64,000 bases of DNA from Octopus sinensis (GCF_006345805.1 NC_042997.1:160394001-160458000), one strand, 5' to 3'; positions 11,501-52,800 are shown, numbered from the stretch's first letter. The notes: a model not told the origin generated them from the sequence alone. Numbers and translations: made by a program.

Positions 11501-11692
11501 TGGCTGATTGTTCTTGGTTAGTTTCCCCAAGATTTTTGCATTGCCAGTTGTTGTTGTGGGTGTAGTCTGCTCAGTCCAACTGGCATCCCTTATCCACGAC
11601 TCACCAGACTTGACGAATGTCCAGATCTGCCCATCATCGCGGAGGCTAAAACTCTCCCGTGGCACAGAGTTGCGATTTAGGGAAGCCACGGA
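8566..11692 (-). mobile_element. CR1-group LINE, 5'-truncated in ORF1, nearly intact ORF2 (APE + RT), (ATT)n tail, 7-bp TSD
   Basis: APE ORF 10778-11689 (LNARSL, ITVTETW, DHSMI) and RT ORF 8701-10824 (707 aa with no stop; YLDFAKAF, GVPQGSVLGP, YADD) are joined by one frameshift in a T7 run (10807-10813). TTCTTAT is duplicated at 8559-8565 and 11693-11699. Confidence 0.95.
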
Positions 11693-12094
11693 TTCTTATG
11701 CCTAGCATTTCTCTCAGGGTGCTTACACTCTGTCGTGCATTCACACTGACATTACACATCCAGCGGATCATGCTAGCTTCATTTCTTTCAAGTCTACGCA
11801 TGTCCTCTGCAGTCACGGCCCATGTTTCACTGCCGTGAAGCATGGCAGTTCGCACACATGCATCATTCAATCTACCTTTCACTCTGAGTGAGAGACCCTT
11901 TGTCGCCAGTAGGGGTAGCAGCTTTCTAAACTTTGCCCAGGCTATTCGTGTTCTAGTGGTGACACTCTCTGAGCATCCACCCCACTACTAACTTGGTCAC
12001 CCAGGTAGCGGAAACTATCAACTACTTCTAGTTTCTCTCCCTGGAGTGTGATGGAATCTGTTTTCTGAGTGTCTGTGGTGTCTATTGTCCCTGT

Positions 12095-12226
12095 GCATCT
12101 GCCGCACATGAAAGCTATCTTATCTGTTAATTTCCCTTTAATGTTGCTGCACCTCTTGTGCGTCCATAGCTTACATTGGGTGCATCTTATGGAGTTTCTA
12201 CCTACACCTTTCCTACAGCTCGAGCA
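12095..12226 (-). other. PHD-type zinc finger (C4HC3) embedded inside the RTE reverse transcriptase
   Basis: CSSC-x10-CTQC-x4-H-x2-C-x14-CGRC, in frame between NVAKNKVIV and LEVVDSFRYLG. Confidence 0.8.
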
Positions 12227-13356
12227 GGGCCACCTGCCCGATGGGGTGTGTGCTGAGTTCGCCTTTCTGCATACTATAACTTTGTTCTTCGCTACATTTA
12301 CTCTAAGGCCCTTTGATTCCAACCCTTGTTTCCACACCCGAAATTTCTTTTTTAGTTCCGGTAGCGATTCTGCTATGAGGGCCAGGTCATCAGCATAGAG
12401 GAGCTCCCAGGGGCAACCTGTTTTGAATTCCTCTATTATTGCCTGGAGGACTATGATGAATAAAAGGGGACTGAGGGCTGAGCCCTGGTGTACACCTACT
12501 TCTACCCGGAATTCTTCACTATATTCGTTGCCAATCCTAACCTTGCTGACAGCCTCTCTGTATAGAGCCTGTACAGCCCTTATTAGCCATTCGTGAATCA
12601 ACAGTTTCCGCATCGACCACCAGATAAGGGATCGGGGAACCCTGTCAAAGGCTTTCTCCAAGTCCACAAAAGCTATGTAGAGGGGTTTATCTTTAGCTAG
12701 GTATTTCTCCAGCAGTTGTCGGACCAGGAATCTAGCATCAGTGGTGCTTCTACCCGACACAAAACCGAACTGCATCTCATCTAAGCAAATTCTCTCCCTA
12801 ATGAGATGGGTTATGACCCTCTCTGTGGCCTTCATCACCTGATCCAACAGTTTAATACCCCTGTAGTTATTTCTATCTAGAGCATCACCCTTACCCTTGT
12901 AGTAGTTGACTATGGTGCTGCTACGCCAGTCATTGGGTATGACTCCATTATGAACTACCTGGTTAACAATACGGGTGACTAGGCCATAGCCCGCATAACC
13001 AGCTGTTTTAAGCATCTCAGCAGTGATTCTTGATGGGCCGGGGGCTTTACCTGGTTTCATATCCTTAATTGCCTTAACTATAAGGGAGCTGTCTATTTGG
13101 ATAGCTGGTCCCTCTACTGGGTCAACATTTGGCAGGCTCTCCTCCTCTCATTCATTCTCCACATTCAACAGTCTTTCATAATGGCTTCTCCAAGCCTCTT
13201 TCTTTTCACCAACAATAAAAGCAAGTGCCCCATCATCCATGCGGACACATTTCTCCCCTGTAACATCACTATTTTCTCTGACACACTGTCTAGCAATACG
13301 AAATACCTCAGTTCTTTGGTCCTCACGTCGCTGGACATTGGCAAACTTCTTTTCTG

Positions 13357-14912: not shown

Positions 14913-15424
14913 TAAGTATCATAAACGGCGATTTCTTTCTGTCGGTTCTAAATTCGATCGTCCATGTTACTGAGTTGAAAAAATTTATAACGACTGAGAC
15001 ATTTTCAAGGGAAATTACAATTATGCATCATCAAGCCGAAATTAGTTCGTTATTTTTCTAATAAGATTTTACTTGGGTCGGAGTTGATGTGAAGTTACAC
15101 TGAAACAAAGGAATCGCAAAACTTTGGCTCCTTAATAGTAGCCTGAAGCTATTAGATGCTCTTCGTCTTTTGCTTGTTTCCCCACTTACTATAAATATAG
15201 GCTTTGCATAATTTCCAGCTTTCCTATGGAGGATGAAGGATTTATGGTGTTCTATGAACTGACAAAACAGTTGTGTATATATATATATATATATGCATAT
15301 ATAATGTATATATATATTGCGAGGATGATCCGGTTCTTGACTGAAGATTAGAGGCTTCGAATGACTCGTCCGTTTTTTGTATCGTCTATTTGAATGTTTT
15401 GCGTTCCTGTCCCATTTTGTATTT

Positions 15425-15442
15425 TTATATATATTTTTATAC

Positions 15443-15513
<71 letters not shown>

Positions 15514-15583
15514 TGTATGTATGTATGTATGTATGTATGTATGTATGTATGTATCTATGTATCTATCTATCTATTTATCTATG

Positions 15584-15617
<34 letters not shown>

Positions 15618-15692
15618 ATATATATATATATTATATATATATATATAATATATATATATATTATATATATATATACATACATACATATATAC

Positions 15693-15750
<58 letters not shown>
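15425..15750. repeat. Compound microsatellite (TA/TATG/TC)n
   Basis: Direct reading. Other arrays: (TA)n 2392-2430 and 4323-4378; (GT)n 13361-13435 and 14596-14700; (CATA)n 19315-19545; (TATG)n 37070-37165; (CTA/CTG)n 42220-42365; (TAG)n 54855-54895. Confidence 0.95.
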
Positions 15751-15754
<4 letters not shown>

Positions 15755-16830
15755 ATCAGCGGTGTTCCCCAGGGGACTGTTTTGGGTCTGCTACTCTTCA
15801 TTATTTACATAAGCGACCTTTCCAGTATCGTACATTACTGCAAAGTGAAAATATTTGCTGATGACACTAAGCTCCAGCAAATCGTCAATGAAGAAGCAGA
15901 CCGAACTCAACTCCAGTCTGATCTATATGCTGTGAGTCAATGGGTAGACAGAAACAAAATGCAACTGAATGAGGGAAAATTTGAGCTGATGCATTTTGGA
16001 AGAAATTCCTCACTAAAACAACCATACTCTCCTCCTTCAGGGGAACCGCTCACAGCCTCTAACAATATCAGAGATCTGGGTGTAATTGTTGATGACGGTC
16101 TCAGTTGGAGTGCACACATCAACAAGAAGGTCGATATAGCTCGTAGGATGAGTTCCTGGATCTTAAGAACTTTCCGGTCCAGAGAACAAGGTGTCATCAT
16201 ACCACTTTTCTCCTCCTTTGTACGGCCACACCTTGAATACTGCTGCCCACTGTGGTCTCCCCATACAAGACAAAACATATCCAGAATTGAGTCACCCCAG
16301 AAGGCACTCACTAAACGAATTGAAGGCATGGCTGCTCTCGATTATTGGGATCGCCTTAAAGCCTTGAAACTTTACTCCCTCCAGCGTCGCCGTGAGCGGT
16401 ACATCATTTGTACGATGTGGAGAATATACCGCCAACTTTGCCCAAACGACCTTAACATTAGCTTCAAGGTTCATCCAAGACTGGGACCACGGGCCATACG
16501 TCCCCTGCCCAATTCAAGATCACAACATACATGTACACTGCAACATAATTTCTTTTCCTCAACAGGCCCTGCCCTATTTAACATTGTCGCGAGGGCGATC
16601 AAAGAGGAAAAGGATCCCATCAATTTTAAACGGAGTTTGGATAGATTCCTTCAAAGAATACCAGATAAGCCACCCATAATTGGATACAACTCACCCAACA
16701 AGAACTCACTACTTGAACAAAACTTGACTTAAACAGGATTCTAATAATCCTATCAGGTGGTGCTATTAAGTTAGACATGGCCTGGGCCAATCTTTGGTTG
16801 AAACATATCTAAGTTATCTAAGTTATATAT
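15751..16830 (+). mobile_element. 5'-truncated CR1-group LINE (RT C-terminal half), second subfamily
   Basis: [16 protein letters not shown] and [14 protein letters not shown] read open to the stop at 16732, followed by a short tandem tail (tctaagtta)n. It sits in a TA microsatellite; the N-terminus of the listed 451-aa ORF is microsatellite read-through. Confidence 0.92.
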
Positions 16831-16839
16831 ATATATTTC

Positions 16840-17030
16840 GTTTTTGGATTTGGTTTGCAAGATTTTTTATATGAGTTCGTGTGTTGAAGCATATTCTGTT
16901 GTATGTGGGGAGATTCATTCACTTTTGGTACCTTATAATTCAACACACTCACCGGTAAAATTTCCACTTGTTTATTTTTTATTTTTCCAAAATTTTCGTT
17001 GCCTCTTGTAACCTTTTCAATAGCTTTTAC
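16840..17030. repeat. Interspersed repeat, probably a Penelope-like terminal repeat (copies at ~46845-46975 and, inverted, ~17400-17465)
   Basis: Shared acacactcaccggtaaaatttccact...cctaaaattttcgttgc. The Penelope assignment is inference. Confidence 0.55.
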
Positions 17031-17471
17031 TCTGTCCGTTACTCACACTGCGCTCCTTTTTCTTTCTTTGTGCCCATGCGTGTGAATCGGTTTGTGCGTG
17101 CCTATACGTGCATGCACGCATGTATATATGTACGTATGTATGCGTGTGTGTATACATGTATGTGTGTGTGTGTGTGCATATGTATCTATTTATGTGTACA
17201 TTTGTATGTATTCTGCGTATTCATGTGTTTGCATGTCCGTGTTTGTGTGTTTTTATGTATATGCTGCGTATGTGTGTGTGTGTGTGTGTGTATTTGCATA
17301 TGTTTTTGTGTACCTCTGTCTCCTTGTGAGTGCATGTCGGAGTATGTGCGTGCGTGTTTTGCAACTATGCACCGTGTTTGTATATCTGTATGTGCATCTC
17401 CATATGTGTGAGTGTGTTAAATTATAAGGCATCAAAAGAGAATGACTCTCCCCAGACACAACAGTATATAT

Positions 17472-17513
<42 letters not shown>

Positions 17514-18344
17514 TATAGAGAAGTGTTTATATGTATGTATGTTTGAATAAGTATATATGCGTAAAACACAGACACAGTGTATATACATATGTAATAATTT
17601 CGATATGCTTAATTAAAATACTCGTAATAAAACCAATGAGTTATAGCACTTCTCCGTACACTACACTCCAAAGTTAACACATGAGAGAAGAATATGTATT
17701 TTTACACGATCAGCTAAGATTATAGTTATGTAGACTCTAATGATCATACACTACGGATAAATGTTAAACGATAGGAACATTAATTGTGGAATTGATTTAT
17801 TTCAAACATCTTTACACGTTTCTCTGTGACAGTTAATTAATAATTAGGTGAAATAAGCTTTACTCGTTTAAAGTCACATCTTCAGCCTTATATGGAATGA
17901 AGATTTGTGTATAAATGATCATTATTGAGATCTGACCAGCAATTTTTAATCAGAACTACATAAGAGAAAACTAAAAGCTGCCATCAAGTTTAACACCATG
18001 TTAAAAGATCGTGGTAAAATGATGTTATTAAGAATGACTTAAATTAAACAGGTTGTCCGATTAATTTATCCATTGATTGTTATAGCAGTCACAAAACAAT
18101 CATAGATAAAATTAAATTATAACTGCAAATACTGGACGAGCGATTTTTAGCCTGGGTGATACAAAACCATCCGATTTAGCAGTTTTGTCCAGCTTGGTTT
18201 ATTTTGTATCTAACGTCAAATGACTAACGACTGTGTTTACTGGCTATAGGGAAAATCTTTCTTTCAGCCTCTCAAAAAAAGTTTTTTTTTCACTGTGAAG
18301 TCTCTAAAACTGTACCTTTACTCCTTTCAGGGTCCAGAAAATAA

Positions 18345-18566
18345 GCACCAGGCGTGTACTGGAGTCGATTTAATCTACTAAAGCCTCCCTAAAATCCAAA
18401 CCATGAGTAGACAGTAGAAAAGATTAATTTATTTAAATAGAGAGTTATCTCCCTTGCACCAGGCGTGTACTGGAGTCGATTTAATCTACCAAAGCCTCCC
18501 TAAAATCCAAACCATGTGTAGACAGTAGAAAAGATTAATTTATTTAAATAGAGAGTTATCTCCCAT
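18345..18566. repeat. Recent tandem duplication, 2 x 111 bp
   Basis: Copies start at 18345 and 18456 and differ at 3 positions. Confidence 0.95.
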
Positions 18567-19230
18567 GCATCTTCAATCTATGAAATATATAGGTGTATTT
18601 TTATAGCATTGATAGGATGTTGCTTAAATGTTCAAAAGTTTTGACATGCTCTAATCCTACTACTTGCAAAGTTGACCAAGGTATATAGCTCTCATTATAG
18701 CGTTTAGTAATTATTTTTTGTTTTATCCATAAGAACGTAGTCACTACTCTTTTTTGTTGTTGCCTATTCCCCGTATCTAAAATAGAGCCAAAGAAAGGGC
18801 TTATTATTTGTTAACGTCTCTGAAAAGTCGTGAAGGTCATGACTGAGCATATGTCTACATCAACAGGCTGTTGGCCTGGAATATACTACATCAATGGCGC
18901 GTACGGTAATAAAGGTTAGAAAGGCCATTGAGAATTGACTTTGCATTAATTTACCCAATTATGTTCATGTAGTAACAGCAAAAATGAAAGAACCGATTGT
19001 AATGAAATTTCTAGAATAGTGAACGGCGATTCATACATACATACATACATACATATATACATACATATATATATAAATGTATTATTGTTGTTATTATTAT
19101 TATCATTATTTTTATTATTATCAATATATATATATATATGTATGTATATATATATATATATATACATAATTTTTTTCCGTAATGAGATAAAACACCAAGA
19201 CTGTGTAGATTTTAGAACATTTATAAATAG

Positions 19231-26049: not shown

Positions 26050-29000
26050 AGTGAATCTCCAAACCAGAACTAACCAAGAAAACGCCAAACGGAAGAATCA
26101 CCGAAGCCTAGTACAAGTAAAACATCACATAGAAAGGAGGAAAAAATAAAATTGAGCGTGAAGAGAAACGTAGAGGTGTAGTCTTGCAACTGGTGAAGCA
26201 CAAAGTGGTACAAAGGATATGAGCTTCGCAGCAGCTACCGGGAGTAAGACTAGGGAGATTAATACTGAAAATTTAAGAGAGCACAGTGAGTTATTGTCAA
26301 GAGAGGGGACCGAGATTAAAGTGGCCCCGCTACACAACATTACAGTAGACGTTCTGGAAAGGGTGATCATTTTTAAAACATGTAATATGGAGAAAAAAAG
26401 AATAGAATATGTGAATGAAAAAATATTGAAAAATGTTTAAAGCCCATATGGGGTGAGATAAAATATGTGACAAAGGGAAAAAATAAGCGACCATAGAAGT
26501 AAGAATGGAGTCGACCGAGAAGGCAAAACATCACTCGGTCGCACCATTAAGAACGGAGGCGGTAGTACTCCTGTCCATATATATGGTGAGGAGAACCTCA
26601 CGGATCAAAATTAGCAACTCTCCGCCGGAAGTAGATGCCGAATGGCTGATGGCAGCAGTTATGCTGGATTTAGATGATGAGATAAAGCTGTTATCTGCAG
26701 AAATAATGGAAGAAAGAAACTGGACGGGTCAGACAGTAAAAATACTGATCCATGCGGATCCACTGACTCTGGAAAAAATTCCAGAGGTTATTGAAGAGGT
26801 GGATACTAAATTGGTCGTGATGGTGGAAGGGAGGAGGCCCCGCTGTTTCAAGTGTGGAATGAAAGCCCACGTTAGGTCAGATTGTAAGACTGCACAGTAA
26901 GAAACTGAAGAAAAGGGAGAAAACAAAGAGGAACAAAAAGAAAAAGACAGAGTCGAAGAATAACAAAGAAGGGGAGCGTTGGTAGATTGTTAAAAAATGG
27001 AAAATAAAGCCAACCTTCCCAGAAAAGATAGAAAGAACTATAAAAAAGGCAAAAAAAAGTTAGAAAGAAAAGAAGAAAAAAGGAGAGAGAAAGGGAAATG
27101 GAGAAAGAAAGAAAAAATACATGGTAGTGAAGGTTTCCAATACGAGGCTAGTATATCGCCTACAATGCATAAAAAAACATTAAAAAGATGGAAAATGAAG
27201 ACGTATATCACCCCAAATTTATGAAGACGTATATCACCCCAAATTTATGAAGGATTACACACTCCGATTCACGAGCCCAAGAAAAAGGAAAAGAGGCGGA
27301 TTCCTCTCCGCCTAAAAGTGAGGATCTAACTAACAAAAGTAAGACTTATGACTGTTCACGTAGGATGTTTGAATGTGCGTGGTCTGACGTCGAGCTGGAA
27401 ACAAGGGCGTTTCCTAAATGACGTTAGATCACGAAAGTTACATGTTAATGTTCCTACTGAAACCTGGTTAAAGGGACCAAGAGGTCTGCTCCCGTTCCTT
27501 AATGGTTACGAGAAATTTATTTCTTCAGGCCGGCCTGCGGGCGAGGGTGAGGTGTTGGTGCAACTAAAAAGAAACCGGGTTCCAGAGAAAAAAGTTGATT
27601 TTTTCTGACCCAGAAAGTTGTCTTAGGTTTGACTTTCAGTTGTAGTAAGAAAATCAGACTGGTGGCAATTTACGCCCCTAATTCTGGTCAGACTGAGTAT
27701 TTTCGAGACCTAGAGACGTTTCTTGGTACATCGCATCCATTAGTTTTGTTAGGAAACTTTAACACTGTTCACGATGCAGCGTGGATAGTGTTGGCTCGAG
27801 TGCGAATAGGGGACCGAATCCTGGCTTCCGGGATCTACTAAATCGCTTTCAGCTAGTAGATCCATACAGACTAGAATTGTCGAACGCCCCATTGTGGACG
27901 TGATTAAGTGGCAATGAGTCTTCAAGGTCGTACAAAGATAGGATCTTAATTAGAAAAATAGATAAAGACATAGCTAAGAGTTCACAGTTTCACTTGGTCA
28001 GCTACAGTGATCACAAGTTTATCACTTGTAAGCTGAACCTAGATAAGTTACATAGCTCTGGCTACTAGAAACTCAAAAAGTCCCTTTTGGCGATTGAGGA
28101 GCATAGGAACCGGATTGAGTTATTGATACACAAAGAGAGTGGAATTAAACCAACATCACGAAGCCAAATACATGGGGTGTATTATCAGGGCTAAACTTCG
28201 TGCAATGGGTTACGAGGGGATCTGAGCCGCTGGATGGTCCCGAATGGCGGAAGCCCGACGTGGAAGTGATTCCACAATTCGATCTTTGGAGAACCTACAA
28301 GGTGAGTTGGTAAACGAACCCGAGTAGATGTGCAAGACTTTTCAGGAGCAGTTCGCCCAGCTTTTCGTGGGGAGCGATGGACTGGATAGTAGGTCTGCCG
28401 TACGAATTATATAAAAGTATGCCAGACTTGTTTGGGCAGATACTGGCCAGAGCTTACGCGAATTGGCAACAGAATGGGATGATCCCCAGATCTGTGCGCT
28501 GGGGAGTGGTGACTCTGGTCAGAAAGGACCCAGACAAGGAGGATAGAATAGATAATTTTAGGCCCATCACTCTGTTAAATATATAGTTGAAGATTTTGGC
28601 CCAGGTGTTAGCAAAAAGATTGGCGGGTGTCGTGGATGGTCTGATCGGCAAGGCACAGACTTCTACTGTTCCCGGCAAAAGCATCTAGGATAATCTCTAT
28701 CTTAAACGTTACACCATAGAAGGGTTTGGTAACGATTGTGGCAAGTGTGGGGCTTTGGTCCATTTAGACCAAGCAAAAGTATTCGATATGGTTGACCATC
28801 GCTATTTGGTGTCCGTTCTCGCGCAGTTCAAACTGGGTCTTGTCTTTCTCAGGTGGATCATACAGTTATATGACAACATCGACTCGATCGTTCGGGTGAA
28901 CGGCTTTCTTTCTAAGTCGTTCTGTATCAAGCGATCGGTACGCCAAAGATGTCCGCTCTCGTTGCTTTTGTATGTGATGGCTATGGAGCCGTTACTGCGG

Positions 29001-29230
29001 AAGTTGAGTGGCAACCCGAGGGAACCAGTTGATGGAGGATCGGTATCAGCTTTTTCGGACGACATCACCATCATCCTGAGTAAGATGGAACACTTACAGA
29101 GGGTAGGCGAAACCATAAAAGGTTAGGAGGCGGTGGTAGGAGCAAAGATTAACCGGGAAAAACCAGTCGGAGGGGCTAATCGATGCCTTCGAATAACGTC
29201 GTGGGACGTTGGACGGAGTTCCCGGTTAAG
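26050..29230 (+). mobile_element. Decayed Tx1/L1-clade LINE (ORF1 with CCHC knuckle; ORF2 APE + RT), 3' end missing
   Basis: ORF1 ...VEGRRPRCFKCGMKAHVRSDC; APE VGCLNVRGL...TETW, AIYAPN; RT NFRPITLLN, LDQAKVFDMVDH, CPLSLLLY, AFSDDIT. Confidence 0.9.
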
Positions 29231-29812: not shown

Positions 29813-30848
29813 CAATCCATGTTTTTTCTAGACATTGCTGTTATAAGATAAGTAATAATGTGTCAATAATTTAAGATTGTACCTTATAAAATACTGAAAA
29901 ATAATATTTCAATTTATCCATGTTGAATTTAAATAAATGTTGTGATTGAATTATTTGATATTACCCATCTTCACCAAATTTATGGCAGGGATTTTTACCA
30001 TGTTGTTCGTTGCACCATGGATCACCAAATATTACAAATAACAAGATCCCAAAACGATCAATTACCAGGCTCACCTTAAATAACCTAATTTTTGCAATAT
30101 TAGGAGGTCACAGGAATTCATTCAATGATAAAACATATCCATCGATTCCGGGATTGGGAGGGTGAACCCCACCTAATTTTTTCCGAACCAAAATAAGGGA
30201 TTTGCAGCACATTAGGAGGTCAAGGTCTTGATTCCATGCAAAAAATCTTTTTTTTTCGTAGTGAAAATCGTGCGGGTGTTAATATAGAAATTTACTATAA
30301 TGTTGTTATTAGCCTCAAATCAAACCTGATACTGAAAACGTATCATCAAAGACATTCCAGCCTTCAGTAAATCGTCTTTTAAGGGATAATATAGGACATT
30401 ACATACAATGGGCGTGTGATTTAGGTAGGGGGCTAATTTGGCTGCTATTTTTAATGTGTGGAGCGACCAGGTAGAGGCTCTTTCATTGGTTCGATTGCGT
30501 GATAAGATCTTTTTTTACACATTTATGTAATATGTATATATATATCATCGGCAGAAGTTAGAGAGTAAGTCAAAAACTGAGAGTTTCGTGTATTAGCACT
30601 TATCAAACACGAATTTGTCCATTGTCACTCTGTAACTTCAGACAAAATAACTTCTAAAGTACAAAATTTTATGCAAAATGTTAAGTGTAAACCCTGTTCT
30701 ATGTGATACATTCTAGCAGAAACGGAAGTTTGAAAGTGTTTAGTTAAAAAAAAATTAATTAAAAGGACACTCACAATATGGTCAAAACATGACATTGTCT
30801 CAGAGATCGCTTACATCATTAAATTGTGTCAAAAGGGTGGGGGTATTG

Positions 30849-33800
30849 TCTAATTATGAAAAATTTTTTGAAAATTTTCCCAAAACATTTTTCGAAAATT
30901 TTCCCCAAAAACTTTTCAAAAAAATTTTCAAAAAATTTTTCAAACATTTTTGAGGAAAATTTTCAAAAAATATTTCAAATATTTGTGTGGAAAATTTTCA
31001 AAAAATTTTTCAAAAGTTTTTGGGGAAAATTTTCAAATATTTTGCAGGAGAATTTTCAAAACCTTCTTCAAAAATTTTTCAGGAAAATTTTCAAAAAATT
31101 TTTCAAAAATTTTTGGGAAAATTCTCAAAAAAGTTTTCAAAAATTTTGGAAGAAAATTTCCAACAAATTTTTCAAACATTTTTGGGGAAAATTTTCAAAA
31201 ACTTTTTCAAAACTTTTTGAGGAAAATTTTCAAAAAATTTTACAAACATTTTTGGAGAAAATTTTCAAATATTTTTCAGGAAAATTTTCAAAAACTTTTT
31301 CAAAAATTTTTGTGGAAAATTTTCAAAAAAGTTTCAAAAGTTTTTGGGGAAAATTTTCAAAAAATTTGTCAAAGATATTTGGGTAAAATTTTCAAAAAAG
31401 TTTTCAAAAATTTTGGGGGAAAATTTTCAAAAAATTTTTCAAAAGTTTTTGAGGGAAATTTTCAAAAAGTGTTTCAAAGATATTTGGGTAAAATTTTCAA
31501 AAAAGTTTTCAAAAATTTTGGGGGAAAATTTTCGAGTTTTCAAAAATTTTTGGGGAAAATTTTCAAAAAATTTTTCAAAGGTTTTTGAGGAAAAGTTTCA
31601 AACAATTTTTCAAAAGTTTTTGAGGAAAATTTTCAAAAACTTTTCAAAAGTTTATGGGGTAAATTTTGAAAAAATTTTTCTACAATTTTTGAGGAAAATT
31701 TTCAAGAAATTTTTCAAAAATTTTTGGGAAAATTCTCAAAAAAGTTTTCAAAAATTTTGGAAGAATATTTCCAACAAATTTTTCAAACATTTTTGGGGAA
31801 AATTTTCAAAAACTTTTTCAAAACTTTTTGAGGAAAATTTTCAAAAAATTTTACAAACATTTTTGGAGAAAATTTTCAAAAACTTTTTCAAAAATTTTTG
31901 TGGAAAATTTTCAAAAAAGTTTTCAAAAGTTTTTGGGGAAAATTTTCAAAAAATTTTTCAAAGATATTTGGGTAAAATTTTCAAAAAAGTTTTCAAAAAT
32001 TTTGGGGGAAAATTTTCAAAAAATTTTTCAAAAAGTTTGGAAGAAAATTTTCAAAAAATTCTTCAAAAATTTTTGGGTAAAATTTTCGAGTTTTCAAAAA
32101 TTTTGGGGGAAAATTTTCAAACAATTTTTCAAAGGTTTTTGAGGAAAAGTTTCAAACAATTTTTCAAAAGTTTTTGAGGAAAATTTTCAAAAACTTTTCA
32201 AAAGTTTATGGGGTAAATTTTGAAAAAATTTTTCTACAAATTTTGAGGAAAATTTTCAAAAAATTTTTCAAAAATTTTTGGGAAAATTCTCAAAAAAGTT
32301 TTCAAAAATTTTGGAAGAAAATTTCCAACAAATTTTTCAAACATTTTTGGGGAAAATTTTCAAAAACTTTTTCAAAACTTTTTGAGGAAAATTTTCAAAA
32401 AATTTTACAAACATTTTTGGAGAAAATTTTCAAAAACTTTTTCAAAAATTTTTGTGGAAAATTTTCAAAAAAGTTTTCAAAAGTTTTTGGGGAAAATTTT
32501 CAAAAAACTTTTGGGGAAAATTTTCAAAAGTTTTTGGTGGAAATTTTCAAAAAAGTTTTCAGAAATTTTGGAGGAAAATTTTCAAAAAAGTTTTCAAAAA
32601 TTGTTGCGGAAAATTTTGAAAAAATATTTGAGGAAAATTTTCAAAATATTTAACTAAAATTTTCCAAAAATTTTTCAAAATTTGTTGCGGAAAATTTTGA
32701 AAAAATTTTTCAATAATTTTTGAGGAAAATTTTGAAAAAAGATTTCAAAAATTTTTGAGGAAAATTTTCAAAAATTTTTGATTGAAAATTTTCAAAAAAT
32801 TTTTCAAATAATTTTAGGGATAATTTTCAAAAAGCATCTCAAAAATTTTGGGGGGAAGTTTTCAAAAAAGTTTTCAGAAATTTTGGTGGAAAATGTCCAA
32901 AAATGTTTTCAAAAATTGTTGCGGAAAATTTAGAAAAAATTTTTGCAATAATTTTTTAAAAAAAGTTATTAAAAATTGTGAGGGAATTGTGTGCAAATGC
33001 AAACAATTTTTCGAAAATTTATTGGCAAAATTTTGAAAAACTTTTTCCTAAATTTTTGGGAAAATTTAAAAAAAATTTTTCAAATATTTTTAGTTATAAT
33101 TTTCAATAAATTCTTTTGAGAATTTATTAAAAAATTATACCTAAAAAAAAAACTTTTGGGGAAAATTTTCAAAAGTTTTTGGGGGAAACTTTTAAAAAAG
33201 TTTTCAGAAATTTTTGGAGGAAAATTTTCAAAAAAGTTTTCAAAAATTGTTGCGGAAAATTTTGAAAAAATATTTAAGGAAAATTTTCAAAAATATATAA
33301 CTAAAATTTTCCAAAAATTTTTCAAGAATTCTTGCGGAAAAGTTTGAAAAAATTTTTCAATAATTTTTTAGGAAAATTTTGAAAAAAGATTTCAAAAATT
33401 TTTGAGGAAAATTTTCAAAAATTTTTGATTGAAAATTTTCAAAAAATTTTTCAAATAATTTTAGGGATAATTTTCAAAGAGCATCTCAAAAATTTTGGGG
33501 GGAAATTTTCAAAAAAGTTTTCAGAAATTTTGGTGGAAAATGTTCAAAAATGATTTCAAAAATTGTTGCGGAAAATTTAGAAAAAATTTTTGCAATAATT
33601 TTTTCAAAAAAGTTATTAAAAATTGTGGGGGAAATTTGCAAACAATTTTTCAAAAGTTTTTGAGAAAAAGTTTTTAAAATTTTTCGAAAATTTATTGGCA
33701 AAATTTTGAAAAACTTTTTCCTAAATTTTTCAAATATTTTTGTGGAAAATATTCAAAATTTGTTTTGAAAATTTTTGGGAATATTTAAAAAAAATTTTTC

Positions 33801-35190
33801 AAATATTTTTAGTTATAATTTTCAATAAATTCTTTTGAGAATTTATTAAAAAATTATACCTAAAAAAAAAACTTTTGGGGAAAATTTTCAAAAGATTTTG
33901 GTGGAAATTTTCAAAAAAGTTTTCAGAAATTTTGGAGGAAAATTTTCAAAAAAGTTTTCAAAAATTGTTGCGGAAAATTTTGAAAACATATTTGAGGAAA
34001 ATTTTCCAAAATATTTAACTAAAATTTTCCAAAAATTTTTCAAAATTTCTTGCGGAAAATTTTGAAAAAATTTTTCAATAATTTTTGAGGAAAATTTTGA
34101 AAAAAGATTTCAAAAATTTTTAAGGAAAATTTTCAAAAATTTTTGATTGAAAATTTTCAAAAAATTTTTCAAATAATTTTAGGGATAATTTTCAAAAAGC
34201 ATCTCAAAAATTTTGGGGGGAAATTTTCAAAAAAGTTTTCAGAAATTTTGGTGGAAAATGTTCAAAAATGTTTTCAAAAATTGTTGCGGAAAATTTAGAA
34301 AAAATTTTTGCAATAATTTTTTCAAAAAAGTTATTAAAAATTGTGGGGGAAATTTGCAAACAATTTTTCAAAAGTTTTTGAGAAAAAGTTTTTAAAAAAA
34401 GTTTTTAAAAGTTTTTAAAACTTTTTCCTAAATTTTTAAGGAACATTTTCAAAAATTATTCAGGAAATTTTTTTTTTAAATTTTGCAAAAATATTTGGGG
34501 AAAATTTTCAAAAAATTTTTCAAAAAATTTGAGGAAAATTTCCCAAAAATTTTTAAAGAATTTTGGGGGAAAACCTTCAAAAAATTTTTGGGTAAAATTT
34601 TCAAAAATTTTTGAGGAAAGTTTTCAAAAATTTGAGGAAAATTTTCAAAAAAATTTTCAAAAATATTTGTGGAAAATTTTCAAAAAAGCTTTCAAAAAAT
34701 TTTTCAAACATATTTGGGTAAAATTTTCAAAAAAGTTTTCAAAAATTTTTGGGGAAAATTTTCAAAAAATTTTTCAAATGTTTTTCAGGGAAATTTTCGA
34801 AAAATGTTTCAAAAGTTTTCGAGGAAAATTTTCAATAAATTTTTACAAAAATTTATGGGGAAAATTTTCAAAAATATTTGTGGAAAATTTTCAAAAAATT
34901 TTCCTCAAAAATTTATGGGGAAAATTTTCATAAAATTTTTCAAAAATTTTTGAAAATAAGTGCCTTACTTGTGGAAGCAGATATTTTGATGTAACTTTTC
35001 TCAAAAATTTTAGAAAAATTTTTGTAGTTTCCCCTAAAAGTTTTTTTAAATATTTTGAAAATTTTCCAGAAAAAATGTCAAAAAAATTTTTTGAAAATGT
35101 TTTGAAAAATTTTTTAAAAAATTTTTTGCAAATTTTCCCCAAAAATCTTTGAAACATTTTTTGTAAGTTTTCCCCCAAAATTTTCCTCAA
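30849..35190. repeat. 4.3-kb A/T-tract satellite (~11-12 bp subunits, ~35-bp monomer ggggaaaattttcaaaaaatttttcaaaagttttt) with higher-order repeats
   Basis: Marker attctc at 31121, 31732 and 32286; marker gcatctc at 32834, 33481 and 34199. Orientation reverses after ~34957-35002. Confidence 0.95.
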
Positions 35191-45627: not shown

Positions 45628-46260
45628 ATATATATATATATATAAATATTAAAAGGCTTCCAAATAAGGACGCGTAGTGCTAGAAACACAAAAGAGATAA
45701 ATTCATGAAAGGAATGAAAATTAAAAACAGTTACCATCTCAGCCATATCCCAAGGATGCCAGTAAAAGATTTACGAACAAATTTATCAAGCAATATTAAA
45801 ACATAATCAAATAGGGTAATAAAATAAATTATTATTACCAGTGGCCTAGCACAAAAGACGAGTTAGTCGTTAGACTATATATTTTTCGTATAGAAATATA
45901 ATAAAAGGCTTCCAAATAAGGAAGCGTATATATATATTGGTTAGTAGAGTTAGAGGTTGGAATAACCGTTTAGGGATTAAAATGTTCATTTTACTACAGG
46001 TATAATTATCTATGTTAACTCTGGACATAAATATGCAAGCATATTAGGCTCATAGGTTACAGGCAATGACAAAGATAATTTTATCAGGAATAAAATTTAA
46101 AGTAAACAGAAAATGAAGAAACACTGATCAACAAGTGACTAACACCAATTATTACTTTTTGATACAAATAGACTGTATCCCATCTACAGTCTATTTGTAT
46201 TAAAAAGTAATAATTGATGTTAGTCAATTGTTGTTGATCATTATTTTTCTATTTTCTGTT

Positions 46261-46330
<70 letters not shown>

Positions 46331-46458
46331 CAATTAAGGACAACTTCTTAATAAGGAAAACTTAAAAAGAAATTATCGGGTAGATAGCGCGAAAAACCTC
46401 ATAAAAGAAAAAATTTCGAAAATAATTCTTTCTTATTGAACATATTAATTTATATATA

Positions 46459-46792
46459 GAGGGCATTATTATACATACATGCCACACGCTAAGAGGGACA
46501 AAATTAGTCATTTCTACCAAAACTTTTACCGGATGTAATATATGTAAACCCACCCATGTGCTTCGTTGAAGTTGATCAGATAGTTGCTCGGCTTAGACGA
46601 GTTGGGTTCGTTTATTTTATGATACATCCAGACTTGCTGATGAATACAGAGGTATGAAATCACAGGTGATACAAGTCCATATTTTTAAATGTCTTACTTT
46701 GAAAAATTGCATTCGGTGGGATTAGTAAAATTTTTTGTAGAAATGACTAATTTTGTCCCTCTTAGCGTGTGGCATGTATGTATAATAATGCC

Positions 46793-46795
<3 letters not shown>
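46459..46795. mobile_element. 337-bp MITE with perfect 59-bp TIRs (GAG...CTC termini, TATA flanks; Sola2-like), carrying the hammerhead motif
   Basis: 46459-46517 is the exact reverse complement of 46737-46795, and imperfect pairing continues ~25 bp further inward. TATA lies on both sides, within TA-rich sequence. The Sola assignment rests on recalled terminal signatures only. Confidence 0.85.
46631..46677 (+). ncRNA. Type I hammerhead ribozyme motif, catalytic core intact
   Basis: gacttg-CTGATGA-atac(agag)gtat-GAAA-tcac(ag)gtga-TA-caagtc. Helix I gacttg/caagtc is 6 bp, helix II is 4 bp, helix III is A-U plus 4 bp, and the AUA triplet fits the NUH rule (predicted cut 46671/46672). Helix I can extend via tatg(46618-21)/cata(46678-81) across a 9-nt bulge. 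Confidence 0.88.
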
Positions 46796-46852
<57 letters not shown>

Positions 46853-47759
46853 GTCTGGGGAGAGTCATTTCCTTTTAGTACCTTATTATTTAACACACTC
46901 ACCGGTAAAATTTCCACTCTTTAGCTTATTTATTTTTCCTAAAATTTTCGTTGCATCTTGCAACATTTTCAATGAGAATATTGATTGCTAGTTCTTCGGC
47001 AAGCTACTACAGAGTAAATTCATACTTCCCACATACTATTTGCAGGTATTAATTATGAGCAATGTGATGTAAAAATTCAATATCGTGTTAGGAATCGATT
47101 TTAAACAACGACGTATTAAATTTATTCATTGACTGTCAAAATATCAATAAGACCTTCGGAGTTTTACGGAAAATGTTAGTTTGGATATAAATTTTAATAA
47201 TCTCCGGGTGAAACAAGTACAAAAAAATGTTAATCTATAAAATACATGTGTCTGCCTGTATTCTTCCATAGGTGATCGATGAGACCTTGGCTTCACCTAT
47301 AAAGTCGATTCGGGTTTTATATATCGGTATATATTGATAAGAAACATGATACGAAAATATCGATCACATGCAATCACACTTAGTTTGTGGCATCATTTGG
47401 TGTGCTGACTGGCAGTCTTTACAGAGTTCATGTTTAGTTTGCGTTGCCTAGATGCGTGCCTCTGCTCAGATAATCAGGAATTTGTATCTTTCCTGCAAGG
47501 AGACTGCTCAGAGAAAGCTATTTCTAGACTCTCTGACACTTTTACCGTTATTCTCGAAAATAGTTGTAGGAGTCTCCCTGTCCACTGACTCTCCTCTTCT
47601 CTATTCCACTTTCGTGTTAGATTAGTTGCCTGGTATGCATATAAGGTGTGTTCGAGCAATATTTGGTCATTTTCCTAAAAGGAAAAGAAATCAAAATGTC
47701 CACTCCAAAAATAGAAGTATATCAAAAATTCAAAAAATATCAACTACAAAATAGCTGAA

Positions 47760-49829: not shown

Positions 49830-52800
49830 TAGAAAATTAAAGGAATGGTACAAGTATGCAGGTAAGGAAGAGAGGCAATAAGAATCAGTATAAGTGGAAG
49901 ATGGATAAAGAGGAAAGTGTAATAGACGACTTTATCTCGAAGAGGACTAAGAGGAAGAGAGGGAAAGCAAGGAAGAGACGAAATGAATAGAAAGAATAGA
50001 GGAGTGAAGATATTCAATAGAAAAAAGGGACAGGGGATAACCGAAATTAAGGAAACAACAGGCATAAAAATGTTAGTGTTTGTAATAGGGCCGTCACACA
50101 GGAAAATATCTGCACATAGGACCCGGCTCGAAAGTCCTTCGTAACAGACTGGCGAGTTGAAATTCATCGACGCATAGAGTCACCCTAAGAAAGTCTTTGT
50201 TTCCTTTCAAAATTAAACCCCTATACAACGCCATAGTACAACTTCCACTAACCGCATTGCCCGTCTGTCTGAGGAGCGTGAGCCCCTGGAGACACTCAAG
50301 GTGCCAAACGCCCATCCTTGGTCTACGCTTGATCCAAGATGACAGCTCACTCAAAGAGACGGGCTGCGGGAAAGCGAGTCCTGTCGCCGAGGAAACGCTG
50401 GATGCGCCGCAGCCTCAGTGCATGACTGTACATCAATAGCCACGGTATACCCAGTCAAGTTCATAGGGTCTTGACAGTAAATAGAGCGCCTGACCAGCGG
50501 AGTTCTTCCTCCCATAAAAGGCAGAAAAGCAAACGCTCCAGCTTGATCAGGTTCTAACTGGGGCACAGCAGGACGGTGAAACAGTAGTAAATGACTGAGG
50601 CGACGTATGTGTTCGCCACCTCTTCCCGACCTTTCAAAGATAGATTCCTCTTGACACATTTCTGGGTGAGACTGTCTACCCTGCTCGTCACCTTGCTCCA
50701 TTTCTTCTCCAGCTGGAGGTCCGGTCCGAACCAGACTTCGAGCAATTTTACGGGCCCGACCGTCCAACGTACAACAACGCTGTCGGTTAGCATGAATCTG
50801 CCTCTCCAGTTGCCGAGCTGCAGGCCCACCGATTTTCCCGGATTAATCTTTGCTCCCATTACTTTCTCATATTCTTTCACAGTAGTGCTGACCAGATCTA
50901 TGTGCTTGTCGTCCGGCACAATGACGGTGACGTCGTCTCCGTATGCCGACACAACTCTTCCAGATTTTAATTCACGCGAAATGCCTCTCAAAATCTCCAG
51001 TTTCTAAAGTAATGATTCGAGGGTCAGTACTTACAGAAGGGATGATAGTAGTCGCCCTTGACGGACCGAATGCACGATGTTGAATGCTTCCGACAGGTGA
51101 CCATTCACCCGGACTACCAAGCAAATGTCGCTGTACATGTCAAATATTCAACCGCGGAAAACCAGACCGAAAACGACCGCCGTGAAAACAGCTGCCAGAT
51201 ATCAAATGCTTTTTACTAATCTAAATTGATCAGAGCCCCACCCACCTGTTTGAGACGGCGCATGTTTATGCGTTTCCAACCAGTTTCTCAGCGACAAGCG
51301 TCAGCCTCTTCACTAACACGTCAGAAAAATTTTCCAGTCTGCGTTAAGCAGAGTGATGGGTCTAAAATTATCTAATACCTCCCCACTCGTTTTGATCCTT
51401 TCTCAGCTGTAGCAGTGATCCTCGGCTCACAGATTTGGGAATTCTTTCATTCTGTTGCCAGTTGCAGTAGATATCTGCCAAGATGCCTGCAAATAAGACT
51501 AGCATATTACAATAAAACTCATAGGGCAGACCATCTGATCCCGGCGATTTTACCCCCGTGCAGTTTATCATCTCATCCCGTATTTTCTCAATTGCTATCA
51601 GCCTTTAGCACCACTCCGCATCTCTTGCTGAGAGTCGTGGCAGTCCATCGAGATAGGCAGTGAAATTCATCCTGCGATCTGGCACACCGTTCGTCCCGAA
51701 CAATTCGGCAAAATGCTGCTGAAAAGCTGCACACATCTGCTCCGGCTCGTTCACTGCGCGTACATTTTGGTCCACAAAAGACCGAATGGTGTTTTTGTTG
51801 ACATTTTACCCCTCATCCACACGGGTCCATCGGGCAGCATTGGTTCCCTCTTTCTCAGAGCATGTGCCTTAGCTCTGACAATACAACCTCCTTCGTGCTT
51901 GGCGTTGAAGTGTTCATCAAGAGCCAACATAGCTGCCAGTACGTCAGTTGCAATGTCTTTCCTACGCGCCTTTTCTAGCTTTCTCACTAAATCGCCCTCT
52001 AATCTATTTCTTTCTACAGCTAAAACTTTGCTAAATCTAAGTGATTCTAGTTTGATGGCCATTTTTAGCTTAGACTACTGTCGGTGTGTAAACAGCCACC
52101 AATCTGAAGGCCCTACCGTTAATACCATTCACGTCCAAGACCACCAGCTTACCTTCTGGTCCAAGAAGACTGACCTTATTTTGAGATCCAGACCTTACCG
52201 AAACAATAGCGCAGTACTCCCGCCACCCATTCCCGCCGATACGGAAGATGAATAGATCTCGTAGTTTTCGAAATTGGGCATGAAACCTTGCGGTTCGGTT
52301 TGTCTGGATTCAGTAATGGCTATTACATCTATTCCTCGCGACCTGAGGTCGTTGAGTAGGTGACCGTGTTTCCAAGGAGACTCCAGGCCACATACATTTG
52401 TGCAACCTATTTTGAGTATGACTAGTTGAGTGGCTGGGAAGGAGAAAAAGGAGAGGACTACTCACTGTTAGCACTCTGGGATGGGAGTGGGATGTCGCAC
52501 TCCCTATGTGGAGTGTGGTGGTCTCCATAACCAAGGATATATAGAGGCTCCAGGACAGTTTCGTGTCGGAGTCTCCAACCGCCTGTGGAAATTTGGATTT
52601 TATGTTGCTGTAGGTATGTTGCGATGTTCGGACTATCTGTGTGTGTTGGCGGTGTATTATCCGTGGAGGGAACAAAATTAAACATCTTAATGTCTGTATT
52701 TTTCTTTATGCATAATAAGTTTGTGTTGTCTGTGTTTATGGCAGTGAGTTTTGTGGTGTATTTGTTATTTTCATATACTTTTTGTGTTGAGCTTGTTGTG

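What the first reader, a model, noticed from the sequence alone, without database searches (positions are those of the whole stretch)
46459..46795. A DNA-transposon-like MITE carrying a core-intact hammerhead ribozyme
Seen: a 337-bp unit with perfect 59-bp TIRs, GAG...CTC ends and TATA flanks. Its centre (46631-46677) satisfies the type I hammerhead topology: CUGAUGA and GAAA cores, helices I/II/III of 6/4/5 bp, and an AUA site. Established: hammerheads in animal genomes are typically linked to retro-mobile elements (Penelope-like elements, retrozymes, Schistosoma SINE-like repeats); GRG...CYC ends with 4-bp TSDs are, as I recall, the Sola2 signature. Inference: this may be a class II non-autonomous family with a fixed ribozyme, or a new TIR-bounded ribozyme element. 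Perfect TIRs imply youth, so an intact core alone does not prove selection. Caveats: the first helix II pair is A-U rather than the commoner G-C, and loop III is very short.
Basis: partly seen in the sequence, partly recalled or inferred. Interest (0 to 1): 0.92.

Follow-up and report, generated by a model that had tools for sequence, protein, structure and literature searches.

The report
Inverted-repeat element with unproven hammerhead-like motif
A 337-base mobile-element-like unit with perfect inverted ends really is there and really contains a sequence that fits the minimal hammerhead ribozyme pattern, but the pattern is most likely a lucky match, not an evolved ribozyme, and this could not be settled without other copies of the element.

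Summary
Unit 46459-46795 has perfect 59-bp terminal inverted repeats (71 bp at 97%), GAG...CTC ends and TA-run flanks. At 46631-46677 lies the window's only match to a type I hammerhead descriptor: all core bases, helices of 6/4/4 bp, an AUA site.

The ribozyme reading is weak.
- **Rfam:** no hammerhead model matches, even at E<=10 on 67 nt.
- **Core pair:** 10.1-11.1 is A-U, not the highly conserved G-C.
- **Helix III:** the fifth pair would leave an impossible 2-nt loop.
- **Folding:** the catalytic fold (-5.8 kcal/mol) loses to a fold that sequesters CUGAU (-10.3). Helix III is populated below 1% in every context tested.
- **Chance:** an equally good match is expected about 0.4-1.3 x 10^-3 times per window, so tens per gigabase genome.

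The "MITE" reading rests on anatomy alone. There is one copy in the window, the target-site duplication is ambiguous (2, 4, 6 or 8 bp) and no transposase partner was seen. No outside copy could be retrieved, so conservation is untested.

A retroelement origin (Penelope-like or retrozyme-type) is a live rival, because those elements carry type I hammerheads, target (TA)n and form inverted copies.

Verdict: a real inverted-repeat element with an unproven ribozyme. I put the chance of an evolved hammerhead at about 0.2. Interest 0.3.

The parts
46459..46795 (.). 337-bp inverted-repeat-bounded unit (36.5% G+C), single copy in the window
46459..46529 (+). Left terminal inverted repeat. 46459-46517 is perfect (59 bp); it extends to 71 bp with 2 mismatches. 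Contains GAGGG at unit positions 1 and 35.
46725..46795 (-). Right terminal inverted repeat. 46737-46795 is the perfect 59 bp.
46531..46629 (+). Internal 99-nt imperfect hairpin, -36.8 kcal/mol, z = -5.1. Ends 2 nt before helix I of the motif.
46631..46677 (+). Hammerhead-like type I motif. Helix I 46631-36/46672-77; CUGAUGA 46637-43; helix II 46644-47/46652-55 with loop AGAG; GAAA 46656-59; helix III 46659-62/46667-70 with loop CAGG; H17 = A46671; predicted scissile bond 46671|46672.
46451..46458 (.). Left flank TATATATA. The possible target-site duplication is 2, 4, 6 or 8 bp.
46796..46846 (.). Right flank (TA)25. It belongs to the neighbouring older repeat (46841-46973), whose other copy at 17408-17517 (-) also abuts a long (TA)n. 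This is the insertion target.

Best explanation
The unit is one copy of a short, non-coding, inverted-repeat-bounded mobile element, most simply a non-autonomous class II (MITE-type) element of undetermined superfamily. It inserted into a pre-existing (TA)n microsatellite inside an older repeat.

The hammerhead-like stretch in its unique interior is a fortuitous match to the minimal hammerhead consensus. It rides along with the element and is not a ribozyme maintained by selection. If the + strand is transcribed, most molecules fold the region into a competing hairpin that sequesters CUGAU, with the 59-71-bp terminal duplex and the 99-nt inner hairpin around it. At best a slow, high-Mg2+ 'minimal hammerhead' cleavage would be seen in vitro.

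Shown: the anatomy, the uniqueness in the window, the chance rate, the failure against the Rfam models and the folding energies. Inferred: mobility, class II nature and absence of selection.
For: **Element**
- Perfect 59-bp and 97% 71-bp terminal repeats.
- The two arm mismatches both lie in the inner 12 bp. Under uniform post-insertion mutation this has p of about 0.03, which fits a repeat that is intrinsically imperfect at its inner end.
- No ORF inside exceeds 45 aa, and a six-frame query finds no protein relative.
- The unit is nested in a (TA)n that another copy of the flanking repeat carries uninterrupted.

**Motif as chance**
- Expected 0.4-1.3e-3 per 64-kb window. That is about one per 50-160 Mb, so tens per gigabase genome.
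- Perreault et al. 2011 state that consensus-conforming sequences are expected by chance in large databases (PMC3088659).
- No Rfam hammerhead family matches at the gathering score, at E<=10 in 461 nt or at E<=10 in 67 nt.
- 10.1-11.1 is A-U, whereas G10.1-C11.1 is 'highly conserved' in animal hammerheads. Loop 3 (AG) is not palindromic, and helix III is not the 1-2-bp form (PMC4209133).
- The hammerhead fold is -5.8 against a minimum free energy of -10.3 kcal/mol.
- Ensemble probability is 0.2-0.7% for helix III and 1-18% for helix I, against 77-98% for the competing stem. This holds in the 47-, 101-, 195- and 337-nt contexts.
- There is no second hammerhead or minimal hammerhead in the window. 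There is no tandem arrangement, so unit-length excision is impossible.
Against: - The motif is compact (47 nt), all 14 helix pairs are Watson-Crick, and its helices I and II have exactly the 6-bp and 4-bp sizes called canonical for animal type I hammerheads.
- Among simulated chance hits it sits in the best tail. Only 1 of 211 loose hits from 14,000 windows equals it on both the energy of the hammerhead fold and its gap to the minimum free energy.
- A per-window probability of about 1e-3 is not negligible evidence.
- Natural hammerheads can have competing folds, and nearest-neighbour energies ignore tertiary contacts.
- Mussel retrozyme hammerheads also lack the classical loop-loop contacts yet cleave.
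- Mobility and class II nature are not demonstrated: one copy, an ambiguous target-site duplication and no transposase.
Confidence: 0.55

Rival explanations
1. The unit is not a DNA transposon. It is a short insertion of Penelope-like-element or non-LTR-retrozyme type carrying a genuine but degenerate type I hammerhead. On this reading, reverse transcription primed from both cleaved target strands on the same RNA end gave a 266-bp 5'-truncated sense copy (46530-46795, hammerhead in sense) joined to a 71-bp inverted copy of the same 3' end (46459-46529). That mimics terminal inverted repeats.
For: - Penelope-like elements carry type I hammerheads in their pseudo-LTRs. They often have an inverted 5'-truncated copy that forms inverted-repeat structures, and they show a bias for microsatellites including (TA)n (PMC8557442).
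- A purified Penelope-like-element protein cleaves and extends both target strands (PMC11167929).
- Animal retrozymes are units of about 170-400 nt, low in G+C and highly self-paired, with a type I hammerhead. Solo monomers exist.
- The unit is 337 bp, 36.5% G+C and strongly self-paired, sits in (TA)n, and has 6-bp and 4-bp helices I and II.
- The helix III segment can self-pair in a dimer (-11.2 kcal/mol).
Against: - No Rfam Hammerhead_1 signal, although this model detects 235 loci in a squid genome.
- G10.1-C11.1 and a palindromic loop 3, both listed as hallmarks, are missing.
- No tandem repeat, no second hammerhead, and no Penelope-like RT/GIY-YIG ORF among the ORFs scanned.
- The arm mismatches are clustered at the inner end rather than spread or absent.
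Confidence: 0.17
2. The unit belongs to a class II non-autonomous family (perhaps Sola2-like) in which an active hammerhead is a fixed, functional part of the element. It would, for example, cut read-through or element transcripts.
For: - Terminal inverted repeats, GAG...CTC ends and TATA flanks.
- Sola2 elements have AT-rich 4-bp target-site duplications (PMC3627910).
- The core is intact and all helix pairs are Watson-Crick.
- The motif lies in the good tail of chance hits.
Against: - All the points against ribozyme function listed under the best explanation apply here.
- A cut-and-paste DNA element has no evident use for RNA self-cleavage.
- The target-site duplication length is unresolved (2-8 bp).
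- No transposase or second copy in the window, and none in any searchable collection.
- No paper linking hammerheads to MITEs was found.
Confidence: 0.1
3. The unit is not mobile. It is a local long-hairpin locus, either a source of small RNAs or a product of replication template switching in a microsatellite-rich, hairpin-rich stretch. The hammerhead-like motif is incidental.
For: - Full-length fold of -165.9 kcal/mol with a 69-bp outer stem.
- An inner hairpin with z = -5.1.
- A second, unrelated 164-bp palindrome lies 200 bp upstream.
- Only one copy of each in the window.
Against: - The sharp GAG...CTC ends sit exactly at the edge of a TA run that another copy of the flanking repeat carries uninterrupted. 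That looks like an insertion.
- No expression data are available.
Confidence: 0.06

Closest known systems
Canonical animal type I hammerhead ribozymes (non-LTR retrozymes, salamander satellite 2, Schistosoma repeats, Penelope-like-element pseudo-LTRs)
   Same: Type I topology, CUGAUGA/GAAA core, helix I 6 bp and helix II 4 bp (PMC4209133). The host unit is about 300 bp, AT-rich and self-paired.
   Different: A10.1-U11.1 instead of G-C. Helix III is 4 bp with a non-palindromic loop, not 1-2 bp with a palindromic loop. No recognisable loop 1 to loop 2 contact. No tandem copies. No Rfam hit. Bounded by perfect inverted repeats.
Miniature inverted-repeat transposable elements
   Same: Small size, no coding capacity, terminal inverted repeats, AT-rich target, flanks compatible with a 4-bp duplication.
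   Different: Multi-copy status, target-site duplication length and transposase partner are all unverified. The repeats (59-71 bp) are much longer than the 12-21 bp reported for the Sola2 elements in PMC3627910.
Chance matches to the minimal hammerhead consensus in large genomes
   Same: Bare three-helix junction with no peripheral contacts. Non-consensus 10.1-11.1 pair. The hammerhead fold is not the preferred fold. Frequency fits the chance expectation for a large genome.
   Different: Cleaner than the typical chance hit: 47 nt, all Watson-Crick pairs, and in the top ~1-3% of simulated hits by gap to the best fold (about top 13% by energy of the hammerhead fold itself).
Penelope-like-element insertions with inverted truncated copies
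   Same: Inverted terminal copies, (TA)n target, hammerhead in the sense strand towards one end.
   Different: No reverse transcriptase/GIY-YIG ORF, pseudo-LTR tandem or 'tail' could be recognised. The hammerhead is not of the described Penelope-like-element type.

Membership tests
Hammerhead ribozyme (type I) | Conserved core: C3 U4 G5 A6 N7 G8 A9, G12 A13 A14, A15.1-U16.1, H17 not G | tested here: met
   CUGAUGA 46637-43, GAAA 46656-59, U46670, A46671
Hammerhead ribozyme (type I) | Three helices around the core, with helix I open | tested here: met
   6/4/4 bp, all Watson-Crick. The claimed fifth helix III pair is impossible because it would leave a 2-nt loop.
Hammerhead ribozyme (type I) | G10.1-C11.1 pair (highly conserved in canonical animal hammerheads, PMC4209133) | tested here: not met
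   A46644-U46655
Hammerhead ribozyme (type I) | Score against the curated covariance models (Rfam Hammerhead_1 and related families) | tested here: not met
   No hit at the gathering score, nor at E<=10 in 461 nt or 67 nt
Hammerhead ribozyme (type I) | Catalytic fold is the favoured or a well-populated fold | tested here: not met
   -5.8 against -10.3 kcal/mol. Helix III probability is 0.2-0.7%. Nearest-neighbour model only, with tertiary contacts ignored.
Hammerhead ribozyme (type I) | Stem I to loop II tertiary contact or pseudoknot | tested here: inconclusive
   No complement to loop AGAG was seen near helix I by eye. A possible UAUG/CAUA extension of helix I past a 9-nt bulge appears only in one predicted fold.
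Hammerhead ribozyme (type I) | Conservation and covariation across homologous copies | not testable with these tools
   No other copy in the window or in any searchable collection
Hammerhead ribozyme (type I) | Site-specific self-cleavage | not testable with these tools
   Needs an in vitro transcription assay
MITE / class II non-autonomous element | Terminal inverted repeats | tested here: met
   59 bp perfect, 71 bp at 97%
MITE / class II non-autonomous element | Target-site duplication of fixed length | tested here: inconclusive
   The TA runs on both sides allow 2, 4, 6 or 8 bp and exclude odd lengths
MITE / class II non-autonomous element | Multi-copy dispersed family | tested here: inconclusive
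   One copy in 64 kb.
MITE / class II non-autonomous element | No coding capacity | tested here: met
   Longest internal ORF is 45 aa. The six-frame query has no relatives.
Sola2 superfamily | 4-bp AT-rich target-site duplication | tested here: inconclusive
   TATA on both sides is compatible but not unique. The Sola2 4-bp AT-rich duplication is confirmed in PMC3627910.
   The ends are GAG...CTC, but I could not verify that this is a defining Sola2 feature.
Sola2 superfamily | Autonomous partner with a Sola2 DDE transposase sharing the terminal repeats | not testable with these tools
   No second occurrence of the repeat and no transposase among the window ORFs scanned
Non-LTR retrozyme / Penelope-like-element derivative | Tandem repeats, each with a type I hammerhead (or pseudo-LTRs flanking an RT/GIY-YIG ORF) | tested here: not met
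   No tandem of this unit, one hammerhead only, and the reverse-transcriptase ORFs in the window belong to APE-type LINEs
Non-LTR retrozyme / Penelope-like-element derivative | Short helix III with a palindromic loop (the dimer-acting design) | tested here: not met
   AUCAC-AG-GUGAU: the loop AG is not self-complementary. A dimer would carry a 2x2 mismatch.
Non-LTR retrozyme / Penelope-like-element derivative | Unit of 170-400 nt, low G+C, highly self-paired; microsatellite target; inverted copies | tested here: met
   337 bp, 36.5% G+C, -165.9 kcal/mol, in (TA)n, inverted arms

The most novel reading that the evidence does not exclude
The unit represents a family of inverted-repeat-bounded elements in which an active type I hammerhead is conserved. 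That would be either the first DNA-transposon/MITE-borne self-cleaving ribozyme, or a new palindromic form of Penelope-like-element/retrozyme-derived non-autonomous retroelement whose 'terminal inverted repeats' are made by priming from both target strands.
Probability: 0.1. Interest if true: 0.75.

Novelty: new member of a known kind. Interest (0 to 1): 0.3.

Why it matters
In animals, hammerheads are so far tied to retro-mobile elements: Penelope-like elements, retrozymes and SINE-like repeats. A conserved, active hammerhead inside a cut-and-paste element would break that link and raise the question of what RNA cleavage does for a DNA transposon. If the element instead turned out to be retrozyme-derived, it would show that such elements can masquerade as MITEs in repeat annotation. 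As it stands, the evidence favours an ordinary short inverted-repeat element with a chance motif. It is a useful caution that descriptor-level hammerhead matches in large genomes need family-level conservation or a cleavage assay.

Tried and rejected
**Searches for other copies (all empty)**
- Exact and 3-mismatch repeat search, and word-7 blastn in the window.
- JGI metagenome scans with an inner-repeat 23-mer and with both termini plus a variable gap.
- IMG/VR scans with the outer repeat and with the hammerhead segment.
- A bacterial/archaeal genome scan.
- Exact look-ups of ORFs inside and across the unit.
- A concatenated six-frame translation of the unit used as a protein query against 5.8 billion proteins.

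**Source organism**
- The best relative of the window's LINE reverse transcriptase is only 58% identical. It comes from an ocean metagenome.

**Rfam**
- Three runs found no hammerhead. The sub-threshold miRNA hits are (TA)n artefacts.

**Empty site**
- Paralogous copies of the right-flank repeat show an uninterrupted (TA)n. The left flank is not convincingly homologous, so the target-site duplication cannot be read from them.

**Other checks**
- tRNA/SINE origin of the interior: none found.
- Sola2 termini: the original description was not retrievable.
- Energy comparison with simulated chance hits: long loops penalise those hits, so I used it only as a rough tail estimate.
- Bacterial promoter and terminator scans were not run, because they are irrelevant to an animal genome.

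Full report
**What is there**

Reading 46300-46960 and checking by script confirm a 337-bp unit at 46459-46795. Its first 59 bases are the exact reverse complement of its last 59. The inverted repeat continues to 71 bp at 97%, with mismatches at unit positions 60 and 65, and then stops. The ends read GAG...CTC.

The left flank is TATATATA (46451-46458) and the right flank is (TA)25 (46796-46846). Because both flanks are TA runs, a target-site duplication of 2, 4, 6 or 8 bp fits equally well. Odd lengths are excluded.

The unit is 36.5% G+C. It has no ORF above 45 aa inside it and occurs once in the 64-kb window.

Its interior has three parts:
- A 99-nt imperfect hairpin at 46531-46629 (-36.8 kcal/mol, z = -5.1).
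- The hammerhead-like motif two bases later (46631-46677).
- 47 bases of spacer.

**The motif**

| Element | Sequence and coordinates |
|---|---|
| Helix I | GACUUG 46631-36 with CAAGUC 46672-77 |
| Core | CUGAUGA 46637-43 |
| Helix II | AUAC 46644-47 / loop AGAG / GUAU 46652-55 |
| Core | GAAA 46656-59 |
| Helix III | AUCA 46659-62 / loop CAGG / UGAU 46667-70 |
| Cleavage-site base (H17) | A46671 |

The helices are therefore 6/4/4 bp.

A type I descriptor of my own finds this site and no other on either strand, even at loose thresholds. A 'minimal hammerhead' descriptor with almost no helix III also finds only this site.

**Is it more than chance?**

- In 10,000 simulated windows per model, hits with helices of at least 6/4/4 occur 4e-4 times per window (order-1 Markov) and 7e-4 (order 3).
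- I also kept the real window and scrambled the two core strings. Of 3,778 decoy patterns, 5 hit, from two independent loci (8635-8685 and 45862-45945). That gives about 1.3e-3 per window.
- With energy filters the estimate ranges from 7e-5 to 2e-3. The candidate is among the cleanest of the simulated hits.

A match of this quality is therefore expected about once per 50-160 Mb, or tens of times in a gigabase genome. The thresholds were set after seeing the candidate. Only one of three topologies was counted. The first stage read many windows for many kinds of feature. All three points weaken the significance.

Perreault et al. 2011 make the same general point about chance matches to this simple motif (PMC3088659).

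**Does it look like a real hammerhead?**

Against:
- Rfam 15 gives no hammerhead-family hit at gathering thresholds over the window, none at E<=10 over 461 nt and none at E<=10 over just 67 nt. Hits of about 7 bits were being listed at that setting. For scale, the same Rfam family detects 235 loci in the giant squid genome (PMC6962438).
- Cervera and de la Peña 2014 describe canonical animal type I hammerheads as having helix I of 6 bp, helix II of 4 bp and a highly conserved G10.1-C11.1. Helix III has 1-2 bp capped by a small palindromic loop (PMC4209133). The candidate matches the 6/4 sizes. It has A10.1-U11.1, a 4-bp helix III and a non-palindromic loop.
- The hammerhead secondary structure scores -5.8 kcal/mol. 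The minimum-free-energy fold pairs UGAU of the core with AUCA of helix III and scores -10.3.
- In the partition function helix III is populated 0.2-0.7% and helix I 1-18%. The competing stem is populated 77-98%. This holds whether 47, 101, 195 or 337 nt are folded.
- I saw no complement to loop II near helix I that would give the tertiary contact needed for activity at physiological Mg2+.

For:
- The core is complete and every helix pair is Watson-Crick.
- Mussel retrozyme hammerheads also lack the classical loop contacts yet cleave at about 0.1 per min (PMC7229834).
- Nearest-neighbour energies ignore tertiary structure.

**What is the unit?**

The inverted ends, small size, lack of coding capacity and AT-rich target fit a MITE. 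The right flank (46841-46973) belongs to an older repeat that also occurs at 16891-17021 and, inverted, at 17408-17462. That last copy abuts an uninterrupted (TA)n of about 27 units. The unit therefore looks like an insertion nested in a pre-existing microsatellite.

No second copy, transposase or unambiguous target-site duplication is available. Sola2 membership cannot be tested. Sola2's 4-bp AT-rich duplication is confirmed in the literature (PMC3627910). I could not retrieve the source for 'GRG...CYC' termini.

Three features of Penelope-like elements fit this locus:
- They carry type I hammerheads in their pseudo-LTRs.
- They commonly have an inverted 5'-truncated copy that creates inverted-repeat structures.
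- They favour microsatellite targets including (TA)n (PMC8557442).

A purified Penelope-like-element protein cleaves and extends both target strands (PMC11167929). Animal retrozymes, now argued to be non-autonomous derivatives of these elements, are AT-rich, highly self-paired units of 170-400 nt and can occur as solo monomers.

A 266-bp truncated sense copy joined to a 71-bp inverted copy of the same end would look exactly like this unit.

Against this rival:
- The hammerhead lacks the family hallmarks listed above.
- There is no tandem array.
- The reverse-transcriptase ORFs in the window belong to APE-type LINEs.
- Both arm mismatches lie in the inner 12 bp (p about 0.03 under uniform mutation). 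That fits an intrinsically imperfect inner repeat better than two copies made from one template.

**Attempts to get the decisive evidence**

That needs the source genome, which none of the collections holds.

All of the following returned nothing:
- Two metagenome scans, two viral-contig scans and one prokaryote-genome scan.
- Exact protein look-ups.
- A six-frame protein query of the unit.

The window's LINE reverse transcriptase finds nothing closer than 58% identity (79% over a partial match), in marine metagenome contigs. I therefore could not confirm that the window is from a coleoid. A literature search found no report linking hammerheads to MITEs and nothing specific for cephalopods beyond Rfam counts.

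**Weighing**

In a squid genome, Rfam-detectable hammerheads occur about 6e-3 times per 64 kb. Chance descriptor hits occur about 1e-3 times. This candidate is not Rfam-detectable even at very lax settings, and it lacks the most conserved non-core pair.

| Reading | Probability |
|---|---|
| Motif is an evolved hammerhead (any origin) | about 0.2 |
| Inverted-repeat mobile element with a fortuitous motif | about 0.55 |
| Retroelement origin with a genuine hammerhead | about 0.17 |
| Non-mobile hairpin locus | about 0.06 |

The first row (about 0.2) is a rounded overall estimate, so it does not equal the sum of the two genuine-hammerhead rows.

Weak cleavage at high Mg2+ in vitro is roughly a coin toss and would not by itself show function.

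**Verdict**

The element is a new member of a known kind, and the ribozyme is unproven. Interest 0.3. It would rise to about 0.75 if family-wide conservation or efficient cleavage were shown.

Noticed in passing
46101-46264: A second, unrelated 164-bp palindromic (foldback or MITE-like) unit lies 200 bp upstream of the finding. Its inner arms 46129-77 and 46185-233 are 94% complementary, and it is 83% over the whole length. It is followed by (CT)18(TA)16. There is a single copy in the window.
   Followed up: partly
46531-46629: A 99-nt imperfect hairpin inside the unit (-36.8 kcal/mol, z = -5.1, 0 of 200 shuffles as stable). It ends two bases before the hammerhead-like motif. It could be a nested inverted repeat or a small-RNA precursor-like structure.
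   Followed up: partly
46841-46973; 16891-17021; 17408-17462 (-): A repeat family starting YTGTTGTGTCTGGGGAGAGTCATT occurs three times (86-91% identity). Two copies abut a long (TA)n directly, and one lies about 160 bp downstream of a LINE reverse-transcriptase ORF. It may be a LINE 3' region with an internal microsatellite.
   Followed up: partly
30826-35190: A satellite of about 4.1 kb, AT-rich, with a 35/70-bp unit (AAAATTTTTCAAAAATTTTTGGGGAAAATTTTCAA). It produces long spurious ORFs rich in KIFKKF.
   Followed up: no
8701-13060 (-): A LINE with an APE endonuclease ORF (10778-11689) and a reverse-transcriptase ORF (8701-10824). Next to it is a second reverse-transcriptase ORF with a weak, sub-threshold PHD-finger-like match (11942-13060). 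The closest database proteins are only 58% identical and come from ocean metagenome contigs. Further reverse-transcriptase remnants lie at 15377-16732, 28755-29126 and 50554-50991.
   Followed up: partly
46764-46860: Sub-threshold Rfam matches to miRNA families (mir-1277, mir-297, mir-568 and others) and other AT-rich models. They are artefacts of the (TA)25 run, not genes.
   Followed up: yes
45650-45676 and 45902-45928: A 27-nt segment occurs twice at 96% identity. Its core, GGCTTCCAAATAAGGA[C/A]GCGTA, starts at about 45656 and 45908. Each copy adjoins a TA run: a long one upstream of the first, a short one downstream of the second. It may be the edge of another short repeat that associates with TA microsatellites.
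   Followed up: no
18345-18569: A 111-bp unit duplicated in tandem at 97% identity.
   Followed up: no
8635-8685 and 45862-45945: Two loci in the real window form hammerhead-shaped three-helix junctions around scrambled 'core' strings (helices 8/4/4 and 7/5/5). They show how readily such junctions arise in this sequence.
   Followed up: yes
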